This document shows, one piece after another, positions 25,616 through 35,676 of a DNA stretch of 64,000 nucleotides. A program made the position numbers and the translations under genes. Positions within the stretch are counted from its first letter, which is position 1. Each line of letters begins with the position of its first letter. Origin of the DNA: Octopus sinensis. Its lineage: Eukaryota. The DNA lies in NCBI RefSeq assembly GCF_006345805.1, contig NC_043000.1, forward strand, positions 65,410,001 through 65,474,000. The letters run 5' to 3'. The notes below the pieces were generated by a model. That model saw only the letters and a list, made by a program, of their open reading frames with translations, made no database searches and was not told the DNA's origin.

Positions 25616-25639
25616 CTTTACATATAATTTGCCTTTGTG
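25616..25639 (-). CDS. 24-nt microexon (A)QRQIICK, phase 1-1
   Basis: ttctttgtttctttctctttcAG|cacaaaggcaaattatatgtaaag|GTAAGTT. Confidence 0.78.
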
Positions 25640-27414
25640 CTGAAAGAGAAAGAAACAAAGAATAATATTACTTAAATTCAATAAAATGGCATTATTATGA
25701 GTATGCATGTGAAGTCATATGGTACGCATATGTACAGATATATCTGTTGAGTCCTTTAGCTGAAAAATACCTCACTAAAATTGATTATGATGTATCCAAA
25801 GGAATACTCTCTCTCTCTCTCTCTCTCTCTCTCTCTCTCTCTCTCATGTGTGTGTGTGTGTGTGTATGTGTGTGGTAGGTCAGCAGGTGATACATGTCAA
25901 CATCACAATCCTCCTTTCATACTCTACAAAAAGGTTGTAGAGTGGCTACAGACACTTATACATACAAATAACACTGTGTAATACAACTTTTATCCCTAAG
26001 TGTCAACTGTTACTTCCTATCTGCTTACCCATAGAAACTATGAAAAATATTTCCTTCAAAGTTTGCTTTTGTTACATTTATTCAAACCCTAAAGAATGTC
26101 TCTCAACACATGGCTATGATGCTCCCCCATTACTCTTGCTCATGAATGACCATGGGATTGCACCTACAAAGTTACCCTCTGAGGCACAAGTCTGGGCAAG
26201 GTTGTTTTTGTGGAAGACCAGCAGCCTCTCCTCTCTATGCCACTGGTGATATCCAAGGGAAAGGCAAAAGTTGATACAGCTTGACTCCAGTGACATTGCA
26301 ACTCATTTCTACAGATGAGTGAACTGGAGCAACAAGCTACTCAAGAAACACAACACACAACCCAGTCTGGGAATCAAACTCACTACCTTATGATTGTGAG
26401 CCCGAAGCTCTAACCAATGAGCTATGCACTTTTGATCAGAGATGCACATATTGTCAGCCACTAAGGAGCATGATCAAATGGTTATGGTCAAGCAACTAAC
26501 AAGCAAATCTGTGGTATTGAGCAGAATATTCGCTATAACAATATTCCTAATTCAGCAACTCAGTGCTGAATCTGTCTGAAATGTAAAGGAAAATAGGTCA
26601 GTTTCAAAACATTGATGTCCAGGTCGCAAAAGCAAAGTTGATTTCAAAATGGAAGCAAATAGGAAATAACACTTACTAACCAAAAACAAAAAAGAAAAGA
26701 AAAATTTTGCAACATAGTATAATCACACATACATTCACACACTGTATAAATAATTATAACGAACAAGTGAGAGATAAACTGTCCTCTTGAAAGATCCTTC
26801 TGCTCTGCTCTTCTCTTGATCTTTCCTCTTCTGATTTTAACTCTATTCTCTAATGATGCATTGCATACTCTAACAGGCACCTAATAGTTTCTGAAATCTT
26901 GAATAGATCTACAACCATGGTTAAAGAGGCTCACTTCCCCTTGAGGCAGATTTGACCTCCACCAGTGGCCAGTTGTTTCAATGAAACTCCATCATTAGAC
27001 AGGTTGTTGACAAGATCTGGGAGTCTATCTGTTCTTTAATGATACTAGATTGTACTCTGCTGATTGCCATAATCTGCTGCTGCTCATATGCTTTCTTTTG
27101 ACTATGGTTTGGTAATATGGGTAGGGTACTTCTATCAGACTGTTGTAAGTATGTATGATAATGGCCTAGTATACACATTATCATGCATAAGCTAGTGTAG
27201 ATTCATTTAAGTTCTGCCTTTTGCATTATTACCCTCCTCACTAAATACTCTCAGTTGGGTTGCCAGTTTAGTCACTGACAGCTCAAGTTTTTATCATTGT
27301 TGTTGTTGCTATTGTTTTTTGTTGATGTTTTTGTTGTTGCTGAGAGATGAAAGAAGGGACTAGAACAGAACAGTTTCCTGTTGTAGAAAAGATACATGGC
27401 TACCTACATAGGAA

Positions 27415-27960
27415 GGTTCTAGCACTCTATGCCACATGATGTCACAAAAACAACACACAATGCCATCCAGGAAAAAGACTGTCCTGGAATAAATATAGAG
27501 AATCCCACTGTTATTGAATATGTACACAAATATCTGCACAAATAATATTGGTGAAACATTCCTATCAAAACATCTGTGAGCATAATAGACCAGATATTGT
27601 TTGAGACAGACAAGAAAAAGTATGTACCATCATTGAGGTCAACTGTCATGTTGATGTGAATATCTCTTTGAAAATCAAAGAGAAAGAAAATAATTATGGA
27701 CAACTGCTTCGAAATCTCCATCTTTTATGTCCAGATAACAAATTTACATTTATACCAATAATAATCGAAGCACTTGGTTTTGTAAGTAAATGCCTAACTG
27801 TCAGTTTGGATAAGCTCGGATTTTCAAAAAAAGAAATCAACCAACTGTTTACAAACACATTACAAATACAATCTGTAAGCAAAACAGTAAAACTATGCAA
27901 GACTTTTCTCAGGTTTAAAATGACCTTGTTTTCATTACATTCAAACGATGGAGCTTTATA
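27415..27960 (+). mobile_element. 3' fragment of an RLE-type non-LTR retrotransposon
   Basis: HNRPDIV..DRQEKVCTIIEV..H.DVNISLKIKEKENNY..FIPIIIEALG (PD..D/E-x-K nuclease pattern). Confidence 0.75.
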
Positions 27961-28537
27961 TCTCTGTTAGAAACCAGCTCCTTCTTCAAAGGAAGAATTT
28001 AAATATTTAAAAACAGATGAGAAACACACACACACACAAATACACACACACACACACACACACACACACACACACACACACACACACATACACACACACA
28101 CACACACACACACACACACACACACACACACACACACTGTTGGCTAAAAACCCAATTATAAAAATTACTTGGATATCAGTTAACTTATGAAGATTTACAT
28201 GAAATGATTAGTGTCAATTGTTCTTTACAGTACTTTTGAGGAGATATTTTGTGATTGAATCAATACAGGAACCACTTCATTAAGTATATAAACCATGCAA
28301 AAAGTCAGTAGATAGCATTCATCACCTGAAATTTCTATTGCACAAAAATACAATCCGAATTTGTTACAAGATCAAGGTTAAGGCCCTCATTGTTCATGAA
28401 TATAGTCAGTGGTATATTATGGGTTATTTTGCTATAATCAGTTTGATGCATAATTATAAGACATGAAGTGGAGAAAAGAAAAGAATGATACTAGTTCATG
28501 AATTATAATACATTAATAATAAATATATTTAACTTAC

Positions 28538-28558
28538 CATTACAATCAGATTCTTCTA
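28538..28558 (-). CDS. 21-nt microexon (V)EESDCN, phase 1-1
   Basis: ttcttttgtttcaatctcttgcAG|tagaagaatctgattgtaatg|GTAAGTT. Confidence 0.75.
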
Positions 28559-28730
28559 CTGCAAGAGATTGAAACAAAAGAATATTATTACTCAAATGCA
28601 AAACTTTCCAGTATGTATGTGTGCAAAGGAAGACAGATGTATGTGTATAAATATGTATCTAAATGAGTACGCATTTAAATATATAAGCATTGTATGTATA
28701 CAAGTATGTATGTGTATGAAAATTGTATTA

Positions 28731-33703: not shown

Positions 33704-33718
33704 CTTTACCAGAATATA
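33704..33718 (-). CDS. 15-nt microexon (V)YSGK, phase 1-1
   Basis: ttttctctctctaactccAG|tatattctggtaaag|GTaatc; keeps frame. Confidence 0.68.
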
Positions 33719-33965
33719 CTGGAGTTAGAGAGAGAAAACATAGCTACATAATTCCTTATAGGTTACTAAGCAGTGAACTATGAACCAAAATGTTTTAATT
33801 TACAAGATTGTAAATTATGTCGAATAACAGTATCTTTTATCTCTTACATGTTTCAGTCATTGGACTGAGGCCATGCTGGGGCATTGTTTTGAAGAGTATT
33901 GACTAATGACTCAAATTATTTATTCTTTGTTGAACAGACATTCAAATTTAAAATTTTCAGATTAT

Positions 33966-33980
33966 CATCACCCAAATATA
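33966..33980 (-). pseudogene. Duplicate 15-nt pseudo-microexon (YLGD) with AA acceptor and AT donor
   Basis: Second copy of a direct duplication (262-bp offset): ctccAA|tatatttgggtgatg|ATaatctgaaaatt versus the live copy ctccAG|tatattctggtaaag|GTaatctgaaaatt. Confidence 0.75.
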
Positions 33981-35600
33981 TTGGAGTTAGAGAGAAAACA
34001 TAGCTACTTAATTGTTTATAAGTTACTAAGCAGTGAACTATGAACCAGATGTTTTAATTTACAAGATTTTAAACTATGTCAAATAGCAGTTCTTTGGTGG
34101 AAGCATTGTCCAGACACTTAGTAGAAAAGCTAGAATCTCTCATTTTTATCATTTCTTAGCAAGAGATTTTCCTTCAGATTATGTATGTGTTTCTGCTTAT
34201 GGATCATCAGCTATTTTCTCAAAGCATTTTTGAATTTCAGAGCATCGTTGCTACAATGCTTACAAAGGAAGCATATAAAGACAGCTTTGTGTCTGACAGC
34301 TGTTTAAGTACAGACACAGGTTCGCCTAATTTTCCTCAGAAGCAATCTCCAGAAACTGGTCAAACTGAACCGATAATTTAAATGTCATTTAGAAAATTAC
34401 AGTTTGGAGGTGAGTTTACCAACAAAGTGGTAATCGGTAATCAACATTTTGCTAAAAATTCATTATTCGCTATAATTATTTTCATGACAAGTTTTTGCAT
34501 GCACACAGTGAATATTCTCTTGTTTTACTGCTAAACCATGAACTATTCTTGTAAATTTAGAATATATTGCAGCTGATAGCAGCTTTGCAATGCTCAAAAT
34601 TGTCCACACATTCTATCTGTGAGTTCATACTTTCTTTCCAATTATAACCAGCATAAAAATGAGACCTGGTCCTAATCCTGATCTTGGTTCTCTTCATTAG
34701 AAAATAGTTTACAAATGAAGCAGAAAACTCAATTTGTACATTTCTTTTGTTCTCTTTTCTTTGCTTTGAGAGTTCCTTATTTGTTATAATAGGCCATTTT
34801 TTGTTCAGTTCTGTCAATAGCTAATGTCATGCTGTCTCTGACATTTGCTACCAAAATATGTTGCTCTAAGATCACTTTTTTCCGACCAAACAGTATGCTA
34901 TGCTAGTTGAAATTTTTCAATGGCAGTGAAAAATATATGTATTTTTATGCTATAACGCATTACTCTAATGATAATTAAACCATATCGCATATTGGTTGTA
35001 TATACAAAGTCTAAGGCCCAGAAAATACCAATCCGCAATTGCATTCACACTAGGGTATCTAAGACTAAATTATTCCATGTCATTATTTAAAGAAGCTCCC
35101 AGAACATGCTATAAAATGGTTGGCATTAGGAAAGGCATCTAGTTATAAGAGCTATGCCAAAGCTGACAATGGAGCTTGACATAGTCCTGTAGCTTACTGG
35201 ATCCTGTTAAAGCATTCAACCCATGCCAGCATGGAAAATGGATGAAGATGATGATGATGATGGAACATTTAGCTGCTATTTCAAGCAAGTTTCATGACTG
35301 CATGCTGTTCCCACTCTAGCTGTTCTTTTGAGTGAACAACTGAAACAATCATTCATCAAAACAGATTGCAAGTCCCAGCTACTTGACTCTACTAGAAGAC
35401 AAAACAAAATATGAGACTAACAATCTGACTAATTAATTACATTTTTATAATAACTCCTATCTGAAATACAGTCACATTACTGTATAAATGTACAGATGGA
35501 AAACTTATTTTCCACTGAGGTTGCAAATTATCCATGGATTAGAACTGACATTAATGTACAGTGCAAAAACAATGTAGTTAATATTTAATCATGAACTTAC

Positions 35601-35676
35601 CTGTTGCAGCCAGTGACATATCCATGAAAATAACAACAAAAAAAAGAGTAATCCAAGTGTTTTTTGCTGGATTCAT
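35601..35676 (-). CDS. Coding exon 1: signal peptide MNPAKNTWITLFFVVIFMDMSLAAT (exon begins at acceptor, 35692)
   Basis: Acceptor cttatttttcttag|, ATG at 35676, hydrophobic core WITLFFVVIFM, S-L-A-like cleavage site, donor CAG|GTAAGTT, ends phase 1. Confidence 0.82.

What the first reader, a model, noticed from the sequence alone, without database searches (positions are those of the whole stretch)
25616..35676. Ladder of four symmetric phase-1 microexons (15, 18, 21, 24 nt) directly after a signal peptide: possible micro-exon diversification cassette at a receptor's N-terminus
Seen: canonical AG/GT sites and strong polypyrimidine tracts define exons 33704-33718, 30347-30364, 28538-28558 and 25616-25639. 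Each is 3n long, phase 1-1 and ends in G. Lengths rise by one codon in transcript order, and together they encode V-YSGK-A-QSSCP-V-EESDCN-A-QRQIICK-E across ~10 kb of intron. The last three each carry exactly one Cys. Established: arrays of short symmetric exons after a signal peptide define the schistosome micro-exon genes (MEGs), which make variants by skipping, and bilaterian neural microexons are regulated by SRRM3/4-type factors. Inference: independent skipping could give up to 16 in-frame N-termini with different disulfide pairing, a combinatorial ectodomain tip I do not know of in a mollusc receptor.
Basis: partly seen in the sequence, partly recalled or inferred. Interest (0 to 1): 0.88.

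Follow-up and report, generated by a model that had tools for sequence, protein, structure and literature searches.

The report
Three annotated microexons in an octopus receptor
Three of the four tiny exons are real, already annotated and always included in the gene models of an octopus adhesion-type receptor. The fourth appears in no model, and nothing supports the idea that they are shuffled to make many receptor variants.

Summary
The window is Octopus sinensis. The minus strand carries the first 12 coding exons of an adhesion GPCR, RefSeq XP_029634696.1 ('ADGRL4-like', 860 aa). That protein maps base-for-base onto the signal-peptide exon (35676-35601), the 18, 21 and 24 nt microexons (30364-30347, 28558-28538, 25639-25616) and exon 5 (18568-18398).

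The same three microexons, with the same lengths, are in every model of O. vulgaris and O. bimaculoides. That includes both O. bimaculoides isoforms, which differ only at the C-terminus, and an independent 2015 model.

The 15 nt first rung (33718-33704) is in no model. Its acceptor AG is CAA in O. bimaculoides and in every tandem copy of the unit, so it is a lineage-specific, unsupported pseudo-exon.

Microexons 2-4 are old tandem paralogs. Their splice-site flanks and one Cys codon each are conserved, and their interiors are variable.

A new point is that the N-terminal ectodomain evolves faster than its introns. O. sinensis and O. bimaculoides differ at 12% of exon sites against 6.3% of intron sites, and at 20.6% of microexon sites. 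O. sinensis and O. vulgaris differ at 14 nonsynonymous and 0 synonymous codons. The 7TM region is under purifying selection.

This is not a MEG-like cassette, and combinatorial skipping has no evidence.

The parts
35601..35676 (-). Coding part of exon 1. It encodes the start codon and signal peptide MNPAKNTWITLFFVVIFMDMSLAAT, ends in phase 1, and has a GTAAGT donor.
   Evidence: XP_029634696.1 maps exactly. It is 95% identical to O. bimaculoides.
33704..33718 (-). It is a pseudo-exon absent from every gene model, or at most a lineage-specific candidate exon.
   Evidence: It is in no protein model. The acceptor CAG is CAA in O. bimaculoides and in the tandem copies, and is shared only with O. 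vulgaris. Its splice scores are weaker than those of the real microexons.
33898..34095 (-). Tandem copy of the unit that holds the 15 nt candidate. It lacks both splice sites (CAA and GAT).
   Evidence: 89% identity. The same two-copy arrangement is present in O. bimaculoides and O. vulgaris.
30347..30364 (-). Microexon 2, 18 nt, phase 1-1, encodes (A)QSSCP. It is coding exon 2 in the gene models.
   Evidence: Orthologs are at L001 16286-16303 and L002 10252-10269.
28538..28558 (-). Microexon 3, 21 nt, phase 1-1, encodes (V)EESDCN. It is coding exon 3 in the gene models.
   Evidence: Orthologs are at L001 19363-19383 and L002 12055-12075. The exon is 76% identical between species against 95% for its flanks.
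25616..25639 (-). Microexon 4, 24 nt, phase 1-1, encodes (A)QRQIICK. It is coding exon 4 in the gene models.
   Evidence: Orthologs are at L001 22427-22450 and L002 15000-15023. The exon is 71% identical between species against 96% and 87% for its flanks.
30176..30457 (-). Paralogous duplication unit around microexon 2, made of conserved intron flanks plus the exon.
28359..28660 (-). Paralogous duplication unit around microexon 3.
25510..25745 (-). Paralogous duplication unit around microexon 4. The distal part of the unit continues at about 24913-25040, after an insertion of about 470 bp.
18398..18568 (-). Exon 5, 171 nt, phase 1-1. It carries Cys 4-6 of the N-terminal 6-Cys module.
   Evidence: The Argonauta hians ortholog has the same phase-1 acceptor.
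14578..14756 (-). Exon 6
10734..10860 (-). Exon 7
8407..8519 (-). Exon 8
7254..7302 (-). Exon 9 (49 nt)
3544..3563 (-). Exon 10, a fourth annotated microexon. It is 20 nt and asymmetric (phase 1 to 0), so skipping it would shift the frame.
1902..2063 (-). Exon 11
835..897 (-). Exon 12. The remaining 17 coding exons, including GAIN/GPS and 7TM, lie beyond the window start.

Best explanation
The interval is the 5' part of the Octopus sinensis adhesion GPCR gene annotated as 'adhesion G protein-coupled receptor L4-like' (XP_029634696.1, 29 coding exons).

Microexons of 18, 21 and 24 nt are coding exons 2-4, included together in every model. They arose by old tandem duplication of a unit of about 300 bp (exon plus flanking intron).

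Together they encode the first 21 residues after the signal peptide. Each supplies one Cys to an N-terminal module with the conserved spacing C-x6-C-x7-C-x8-C-x9-C-x4-C. Exon 5 supplies the other three Cys.

They are most likely recognised by exon definition, through unusually strong and conserved splice signals (GTAAGTT donors and long pyrimidine tracts). This step is inferred.

The non-Cys residues, and the whole N-terminal ectodomain, change faster than neutral sequence. The likely cause is positive selection on a ligand- or partner-binding surface, while the 7TM core is under purifying selection.

The 15 nt 'first rung' is not part of the gene models. It is an intronic sequence that gained an AG by a point change in the O. 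sinensis/O. vulgaris lineage.
For: 1. Exact mapping. P0006 maps exactly onto 12 window exons, including the three microexons and without the 15 nt one.

2. Same structure in other species. O. bimaculoides X1 and X2, the 2015 fragment model A0A0L8HT67 and O. vulgaris CAI9721574.1 have the same N-terminal structure and exon lengths.

3. Domains. Pfam finds GPS at 483-526 and 7tm_2 at 537-772.

4. Paralogy. The three units align at 63-71% over 240-300 nt. The fraction of alignment columns identical in all three units is 0.9 at donor +1..+10, 0.6 at acceptor -20..-1, 0.33 inside the exon and 0.22-0.36 in the distal flanks. The TGT Cys codon is invariant.

5. The 15 nt candidate. The acceptor reads CAA in O. 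bimaculoides and in all tandem copies, and CAG only in O. sinensis and O. vulgaris.

6. Evolutionary rates.
- O. sinensis vs O. bimaculoides: non-coding divergence is 6.3% (18.6 kb). Window exons diverge 12.0% (Fisher P = 3e-9) and microexons 13/63 = 20.6% (P = 1.4e-4).
- O. sinensis vs O. vulgaris: 14 nonsynonymous and 0 synonymous codon differences. Exon divergence is 1.6% against 0.45% non-coding (P = 2e-4).
- Nei-Gojobori dN/dS is 0.23 in the 7TM region and about 0.95 across the ectodomain. Microexon dN is 0.24 against a gene-wide dS of 0.09.

7. Cys positions are identical in the three species.
Against: The protein models are computational, and I could not see the RNA-seq support behind them. 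Annotation pipelines under-report microexon skipping.

Ectodomains of adhesion GPCRs are often alternatively spliced in vertebrates. Phase 1-1 symmetry would make any skip in-frame.

The ectodomain has 19 Cys, an odd number, so Cys parity cannot be used against skipping.

The 15 nt candidate has splice scores inside the range of real exons of this gene. Its two lineage-specific changes both strengthen its splice sites.

The selection inference has weaknesses. The intron divergence comes from BLAST-alignable segments only. The microexon dS rests on 3.5 synonymous differences.
Confidence: 0.8

Rival explanations
1. The microexons are independently skippable cassette exons that generate a combinatorial set of in-frame N-termini: up to 16 with four exons, or 8 with the three real ones.
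For: All three real microexons are 3n, phase 1-1 and end in G, so every combination is in-frame. Microexons and adhesion-GPCR ectodomains are frequent targets of alternative splicing (established knowledge; PMC6954182 and PMC7195488 were found). Microexons 2 and 3 have TGC directly before the acceptor AG in both species. That resembles the UGC element of SRRM4-dependent microexons, which is a lead recalled from memory and not a test.
Against: No model in three species lacks any of microexons 2-4, and the O. bimaculoides isoforms X1 and X2 differ only at the C-terminus. Each microexon's Cys and the Cys spacing are conserved. The fourth exon needed for 16 variants is not in any model, and its acceptor is absent in O. 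bimaculoides.
Confidence: 0.1
2. Microexons 2-4 are mutually exclusive alternatives, as tandemly duplicated exons often are. One would be chosen per transcript, possibly through competing RNA structures.
For: They are adjacent paralogs of similar size with conserved intronic flanks. Each carries exactly one Cys at the same relative position.
Against: All models contain all three in series. An RNAduplex scan of the conserved flanks against the whole pre-mRNA interval found no common docking partner: the best partners differ for each unit.
Confidence: 0.04
3. The 15 nt sequence (33718-33704) is a newly born, low-inclusion alternative microexon specific to the O. sinensis/O. vulgaris lineage. It would add VYSGK just after the signal-peptide cleavage site.
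For: The AG and the AAG|GT donor context are derived changes shared by O. sinensis and O. vulgaris, and both strengthen the splice sites. The candidate is 3n, open and phase-compatible. By my own estimate from the candidate counts, a symmetric open candidate at these score cut-offs is expected only about 0.1 times in the 17 kb between exon 1 and exon 5.
Against: It is absent from the O. sinensis RefSeq and O. vulgaris models. Its donor GGTAAT scores 2.7, well below the four real microexons. The clustering of differences in the 'exon' against its tandem copy is not significant (scan permutation P = 0.76).
Confidence: 0.12

Closest known systems
Schistosome micro-exon genes (MEGs)
   Same: A signal-peptide exon is followed by symmetric microexons separated by long introns. 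The exon interiors vary much faster than the flanking intron sequence.
   Different: MEG coding regions are made almost wholly of microexons of 3-81 bp and encode small secreted proteins (bioRxiv 10.1101/2023.06.21.545858, found). Here three microexons make 63 of 2583 coding nt of an 860 aa 7TM receptor. No exon-skipping variants are known, and the gene is not related by descent.
Tandem exon duplication in animal genes
   Same: Adjacent paralogous exons share flanks, splice sites and reading phase.
   Different: Duplicated exons are often mutually exclusive (established knowledge). Here all three are included in series, so they act as an internal peptide repeat with one Cys each.
Alternatively spliced mini-exons or microexons in ectodomains of synaptic adhesion receptors (the latrophilin/ADGRL splice site between the lectin and olfactomedin domains, named from memory; PTPdelta meA and meB)
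   Same: Very short 3n exons in the extracellular region of an adhesion-type receptor. The flanking intron sequence is conserved. Two of the three have a UGC before the acceptor.
   Different: Those exons are regulated cassettes with shown effects on ligand binding (PMC7195488, PMC12075705). Here the inclusion pattern is untested and all models include them. They sit at the extreme N-terminus and carry structural Cys.
Vertebrate ADGRL4/ELTD1
   Same: GPS motif plus a secretin-like 7TM domain. The RefSeq name is derived from this similarity.
   Different: No EGF or other Pfam domain is found in the roughly 480 aa ectodomain. The ectodomain has relatives only in octopods. 'L4-like' is a similarity label, not shown orthology.

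Membership tests
Schistosome micro-exon genes (MEG) | Most of the coding sequence is built from symmetric microexons (3-81 bp) | tested here: not met
   Three symmetric microexons total 63 nt of a 2583 nt CDS. The other 26 coding exons are 20-179 nt and of mixed phases.
Schistosome micro-exon genes (MEG) | A conventional 5' exon encoding a signal peptide, directly followed by microexons | tested here: met
   Exon 1 encodes MNPAKNTWITLFFVVIFMDMSLAAT and ends in phase 1. Microexons follow.
Schistosome micro-exon genes (MEG) | The product is a small secreted protein | tested here: not met
   The product is an 860 aa adhesion GPCR with GPS and 7tm_2 domains.
Schistosome micro-exon genes (MEG) | Protein variants are generated by skipping individual microexons | not testable with these tools
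   No read-level RNA data are available. All annotated models in three species include microexons 2-4.
Adhesion GPCR (class B2) | A GPS motif immediately N-terminal to a secretin-family 7TM domain | tested here: met
   PF01825 at 483-526 (E = 6e-12) and PF00002 at 537-772 (E = 1.5e-36) in P0006. The sequence CVCTHL/TSFAILM is present.
Adhesion GPCR (class B2) | A signal peptide and a long extracellular region | tested here: met
   The protein has an N-terminal hydrophobic leader and an ectodomain of about 510 aa.
ADGRL4/ELTD1 orthologs | EGF-like domains in the ectodomain | tested here: not met
   Pfam finds no EGF or other domain N-terminal to the GPS motif at E up to 1.
SRRM3/4 (eMIC)-dependent neural microexons | Length 3n and at most about 27-30 nt, with conserved flanking intron | tested here: met
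   Lengths are 18, 21 and 24 nt. Flanks are 94-96% identical between species and conserved among the paralogs.
SRRM3/4 (eMIC)-dependent neural microexons | A UGC motif close upstream of the 3' splice site | tested here: inconclusive
   TGCAG is present at microexons 2 and 3 in both species, but TTCAG at microexon 4. The motif definition is recalled from memory and no statistical test was made.
SRRM3/4 (eMIC)-dependent neural microexons | Neural-specific, factor-dependent inclusion | not testable with these tools
   No expression or splicing data are held.
Mutually exclusive tandem-duplicated exons | Adjacent exons are paralogous | tested here: met
Mutually exclusive tandem-duplicated exons | Only one of the paralogous exons is present per transcript | tested here: not met
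   All gene models carry all three in series. This is model-level evidence, not read-level evidence.

The most novel reading that the evidence does not exclude
The extreme N-terminus of an octopod-restricted adhesion GPCR is a fast-evolving recognition tip under positive selection. It is built from duplicated one-Cys microexons whose splice flanks are frozen while their interiors turn over at about three times the neutral rate. This would be a MEG-like mode of evolution in a cephalopod receptor. In addition, one or more of these exons, or the nascent 15 nt candidate, may be alternatively included in some tissue.
Probability: 0.15. Interest if true: 0.55.

Novelty: new member of a known kind. 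Interest (0 to 1): 0.27.

Why it matters
The finding loses most of its claimed novelty. The microexons are already in public gene models for this locus and its orthologs, and they appear constitutive.

Two modest results remain:
- A clean example of microexon birth by tandem duplication, with conserved splice flanks and hypervariable interiors.
- An octopod-restricted adhesion GPCR whose N-terminal ectodomain evolves faster than its introns, with 14 nonsynonymous and 0 synonymous differences between two sibling species. That makes it a candidate for a lineage-specific recognition function.

Neither result opens a long-standing question.

Tried and rejected
1. Word-index protein searches. The search with the concatenated 108 aa N-terminus found nothing. 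This was a false negative, because the database holds P0004 and P0006. The search with an Argonauta exon also found nothing.

Exon 5 alone then gave the decisive hit.

3. Ab initio search for downstream exons with my own splice-site scoring matrix was inconclusive. It was later resolved by exact protein-to-genome mapping.

5. Docking or selector RNA pairing for mutually exclusive splicing: no shared partner.

6. Clustering of differences in the 15 nt 'exon' against its tandem copy was not significant (P = 0.76).

7. A Cys-parity argument against skipping was abandoned, because the ectodomain has 19 Cys.

8. AlphaFold2 of the N-terminal 249 aa with 3 sequences gave pLDDT 38 and was unusable, so no fold search was run.

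9. Literature: no paper on MEG-like genes in cephalopods or on this receptor. The 2026 bioRxiv splicing paper includes O. bimaculoides, but the passages I read gave nothing on this gene.

10. Deeper conservation. The Argonauta hians locus holds exon 5 with the same phase, but the held DNA ends 469 nt upstream of it.

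
Full report
**1. The observation**

On the minus strand, the exon at 35676-35601 starts with ATG. It encodes a typical signal peptide (MNPAKNTWITLFFVVIFMDMSLAAT) and ends in phase 1 at a GTAAGT donor. The 171 nt exon at 18568-18398 follows.

I scored splice sites with a simple matrix of my own. 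The 18, 21 and 24 nt exons fall in roughly the top 1% of all AG and GT sites in the window. The 15 nt one has a weaker donor, GGTAAT.

With the cut-offs set at the weakest of the four, the whole window holds six candidates of 6-30 nt on the minus strand and one on the plus strand. The cluster is therefore not a chance pattern.

**2. What the gene is**

A word-index protein search with the concatenated N-terminus returned nothing. This later proved to be a false negative.

An exhaustive HMMER search with exon 5 alone found one representative, P0001 (E = 1.5e-16). It is XP_052823013.1, 'adhesion G protein-coupled receptor L4 isoform X2' of Octopus bimaculoides. Its cluster and a follow-up search gave four more proteins:
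- O. bimaculoides isoform X1 (P0002).
- The 2015 fragment model A0A0L8HT67 (P0003).
- O. vulgaris CAI9721574.1 (P0004).
- O. sinensis XP_029634696.1 (P0006, 860 aa).

P0006 maps without a single mismatch onto twelve minus-strand exons of the window: 35676-35601, 30364-30347, 28558-28538, 25639-25616, 18568-18398, 14756-14578, 10860-10734, 8519-8407, 7302-7254, 3563-3544, 2063-1902 and 897-835.

The window is therefore O. sinensis. Pfam sees only GPS (483-526) and 7tm_2 (537-772), so this is an adhesion GPCR with an ectodomain of about 480 residues that carries no recognised domain.

**3. Three rungs are real and included in every model; the first is in none**

All five protein models read SP-AQSSC(P/L)-(VEESDCN/DDEPNCN)-AQ..I.C(K/N)-E(Q/H)FSSLSC. 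In other words, microexons 2, 3 and 4 are all present and VYSGK is never present. The two O. bimaculoides isoforms differ only at the C-terminus.

I fetched the O. bimaculoides (L001) and O. vulgaris (L002) loci and mapped their proteins exactly. Both have 29 coding exons, and exons 2-4 are 18, 21 and 24 nt in both.

The 15 nt candidate lies in a unit of about 200 bp that is tandemly duplicated in all three species. Its acceptor reads CAG only in O. sinensis and O. vulgaris. It reads CAA in the O. bimaculoides ortholog and in the second copy of every species, so CAA is ancestral.

Its scores (3.9 and 2.7) are inside the range of real exons of this gene but below all four real microexons. It is best read as an intronic pseudo-exon. 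I give about 12% to its being a nascent, low-inclusion exon.

**4. Origin and anatomy of microexons 2-4**

The three units are paralogs, 63-71% identical over 240-300 nt, and the window holds no further copy.

Conservation among the paralogs, measured as the fraction of alignment columns identical in all three units, runs as follows:

| Region | Fraction of columns identical |
|---|---|
| Donor +1..+10 | 0.9 |
| Acceptor -20..-1 | 0.6 |
| Exon interior | 0.33 |
| Distal flanks | 0.22-0.36 |

The invariant positions inside the exon are the TGT Cys codon and the final G.

Orthologous flanks are about 94-96% identical, so the duplication long predates the split of the three species. Each exon contributes one Cys. 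Together with exon 5, the mature N-terminus has six Cys with spacing that is identical in the three species.

**5. Rapid evolution**

Between O. sinensis and O. bimaculoides:

| Sequence class | Divergence | Fisher test against non-coding |
|---|---|---|
| Alignable non-coding DNA (18.6 kb) | 6.3% | - |
| Exons in the window | 12.0% (99/823) | P = 3e-9 |
| Microexons 2-4 | 20.6% (13/63) | P = 1.4e-4 |

For microexons 3 and 4, the exons are 76% and 71% identical while their 150 nt flanks are 87-96% identical.

Between the sibling species O. sinensis and O. vulgaris, non-coding divergence is 0.45% and exon divergence 1.6% (P = 2e-4). All 14 differing codons in the first 341 are nonsynonymous. 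Amino-acid differences per site fall from 0.044 in the N-terminal ectodomain to 0.006 in the 7TM region and tail.

Nei-Gojobori estimates for O. vulgaris against O. bimaculoides give omega 0.23 for the 7TM region and about 0.95 for the ectodomain, with segments at 1.7-2.0. Microexon dN is 0.24 against a gene-wide dS of 0.09.

I infer positive selection on the N-terminal ectodomain. There are caveats: the microexons offer few sites, only alignable intron was used as the neutral proxy, and the comparisons are pairwise only.

**6. Mechanism and rivals**

Shown: the three microexons are coding exons in every available model, and they are paralogs with conserved splice signals.

Inferred: they are constitutively recognised through strong splice sites, and they form part of a disulfide-bonded N-terminal module.

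It has no supporting isoform, and one of its four exons is not in any model.

Mutually exclusive use is contradicted by the models, and no shared docking sequence was found.

Cys parity does not discriminate between the readings, because the ectodomain has 19 Cys. A structure prediction of the N-terminal 249 residues was unusable, with pLDDT 38.

**7. Comparison with known systems**

This is not a MEG. MEGs are small secreted proteins built almost wholly of microexons (10.1101/2023.06.21.545858). Here 63 of 2583 coding nt are microexonic, in a 7TM receptor. It shares with MEGs only the position after a signal-peptide exon, the exon symmetry, and the contrast between conserved flanks and variable exons.

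It is a member of the adhesion GPCR class, since GPS and 7tm_2 are present. It is not demonstrably an ADGRL4 ortholog, because no EGF domain is found.

TGC precedes the acceptor AG at microexons 2 and 3 but not at microexon 4. That resembles SRRM4-type microexons but is only a lead.

**8. Depth of conservation**

Argonauta hians has the exon 5 ortholog with the same phase-1 acceptor. Its N-terminal exons are annotated as a separate 150 aa gene, so the model is split. The DNA I could hold ends 469 nt upstream of exon 5, so the microexons could not be checked there.

**9. Verdict**

The feature is an ordinary, already annotated piece of gene structure of a known kind, namely tandemly duplicated symmetric microexons. 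There is one modestly interesting addition: a fast-evolving ectodomain in an octopod-restricted adhesion GPCR.

Noticed in passing
window 3544-3563 (-); L001 43247-43266; L002 36590-36609: A fourth annotated microexon of the same gene (exon 10, 20 nt, encodes SPVTDK). It is asymmetric (phase 1 to 0), so it cannot be skipped in-frame. It is conserved in three species.
   Followed up: yes
window 835-35676 (-), the coding exons: The N-terminal ectodomain exons diverge faster than the surrounding introns. O. sinensis and O. vulgaris show 14 nonsynonymous and 0 synonymous codon differences, and exon divergence is 2 to 3.5 times non-coding divergence. This suggests positive selection on the ectodomain.
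   Followed up: yes
L002 4950-5025 (O. vulgaris): The O. vulgaris model CAI9721574.1 starts at an internal Met (MDMSLAAT). The upstream ATG and full signal peptide are intact in the genome, so the model is probably truncated at its 5' end.
   Followed up: partly
L003 2368-8066 and 10001-35458 (Argonauta hians): The N-terminal exons of the Argonauta ortholog (matches to Octopus exons 6-9) fall in a separately called 150 aa gene upstream of the 'partial' receptor model. The gene is probably split in that annotation.
   Followed up: partly
window 37911-38495 (+), with neighbouring open frames 36198-38906 (+): A PIF1-like helicase fragment (Pfam E = 1e-5) sits in a run of open frames just upstream of the receptor's first coding exon. 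It may be a Helitron-type transposon remnant.
   Followed up: partly
window 20933-21421 (+) and 48685-49110 (-): Reverse-transcriptase (RVT_1) fragments. The first lies inside the 7 kb intron between microexon 4 and exon 5. The second belongs to a longer retroelement-like run of open frames at about 47358-50149.
   Followed up: partly
window ~2047-3310 and ~16015-16747: Two intronic tandem duplications, seen as identical open-frame translations repeated about 572 bp and about 517 bp apart.
   Followed up: no
window 31628-31647 (-): A 20 nt sequence in the intron between exon 1 and microexon 2 has splice-site scores like real exons (acceptor 3.9, donor 4.0). It is in no model, and including it would shift the frame. 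It is probably a decoy.
   Followed up: no
window 25040-25510: The paralogous unit of microexon 4 is interrupted by an insertion of about 470 bp. The insertion contains a repeat that is also present at 9827-10000 and 10184-10347 and at several places in the O. bimaculoides locus.
   Followed up: no
tools: The word-index protein search returned no hit for short queries although the database holds near-identical proteins (P0004, P0006). Negatives from that tool with queries of about 110 aa or fewer should not be trusted.
   Followed up: yes
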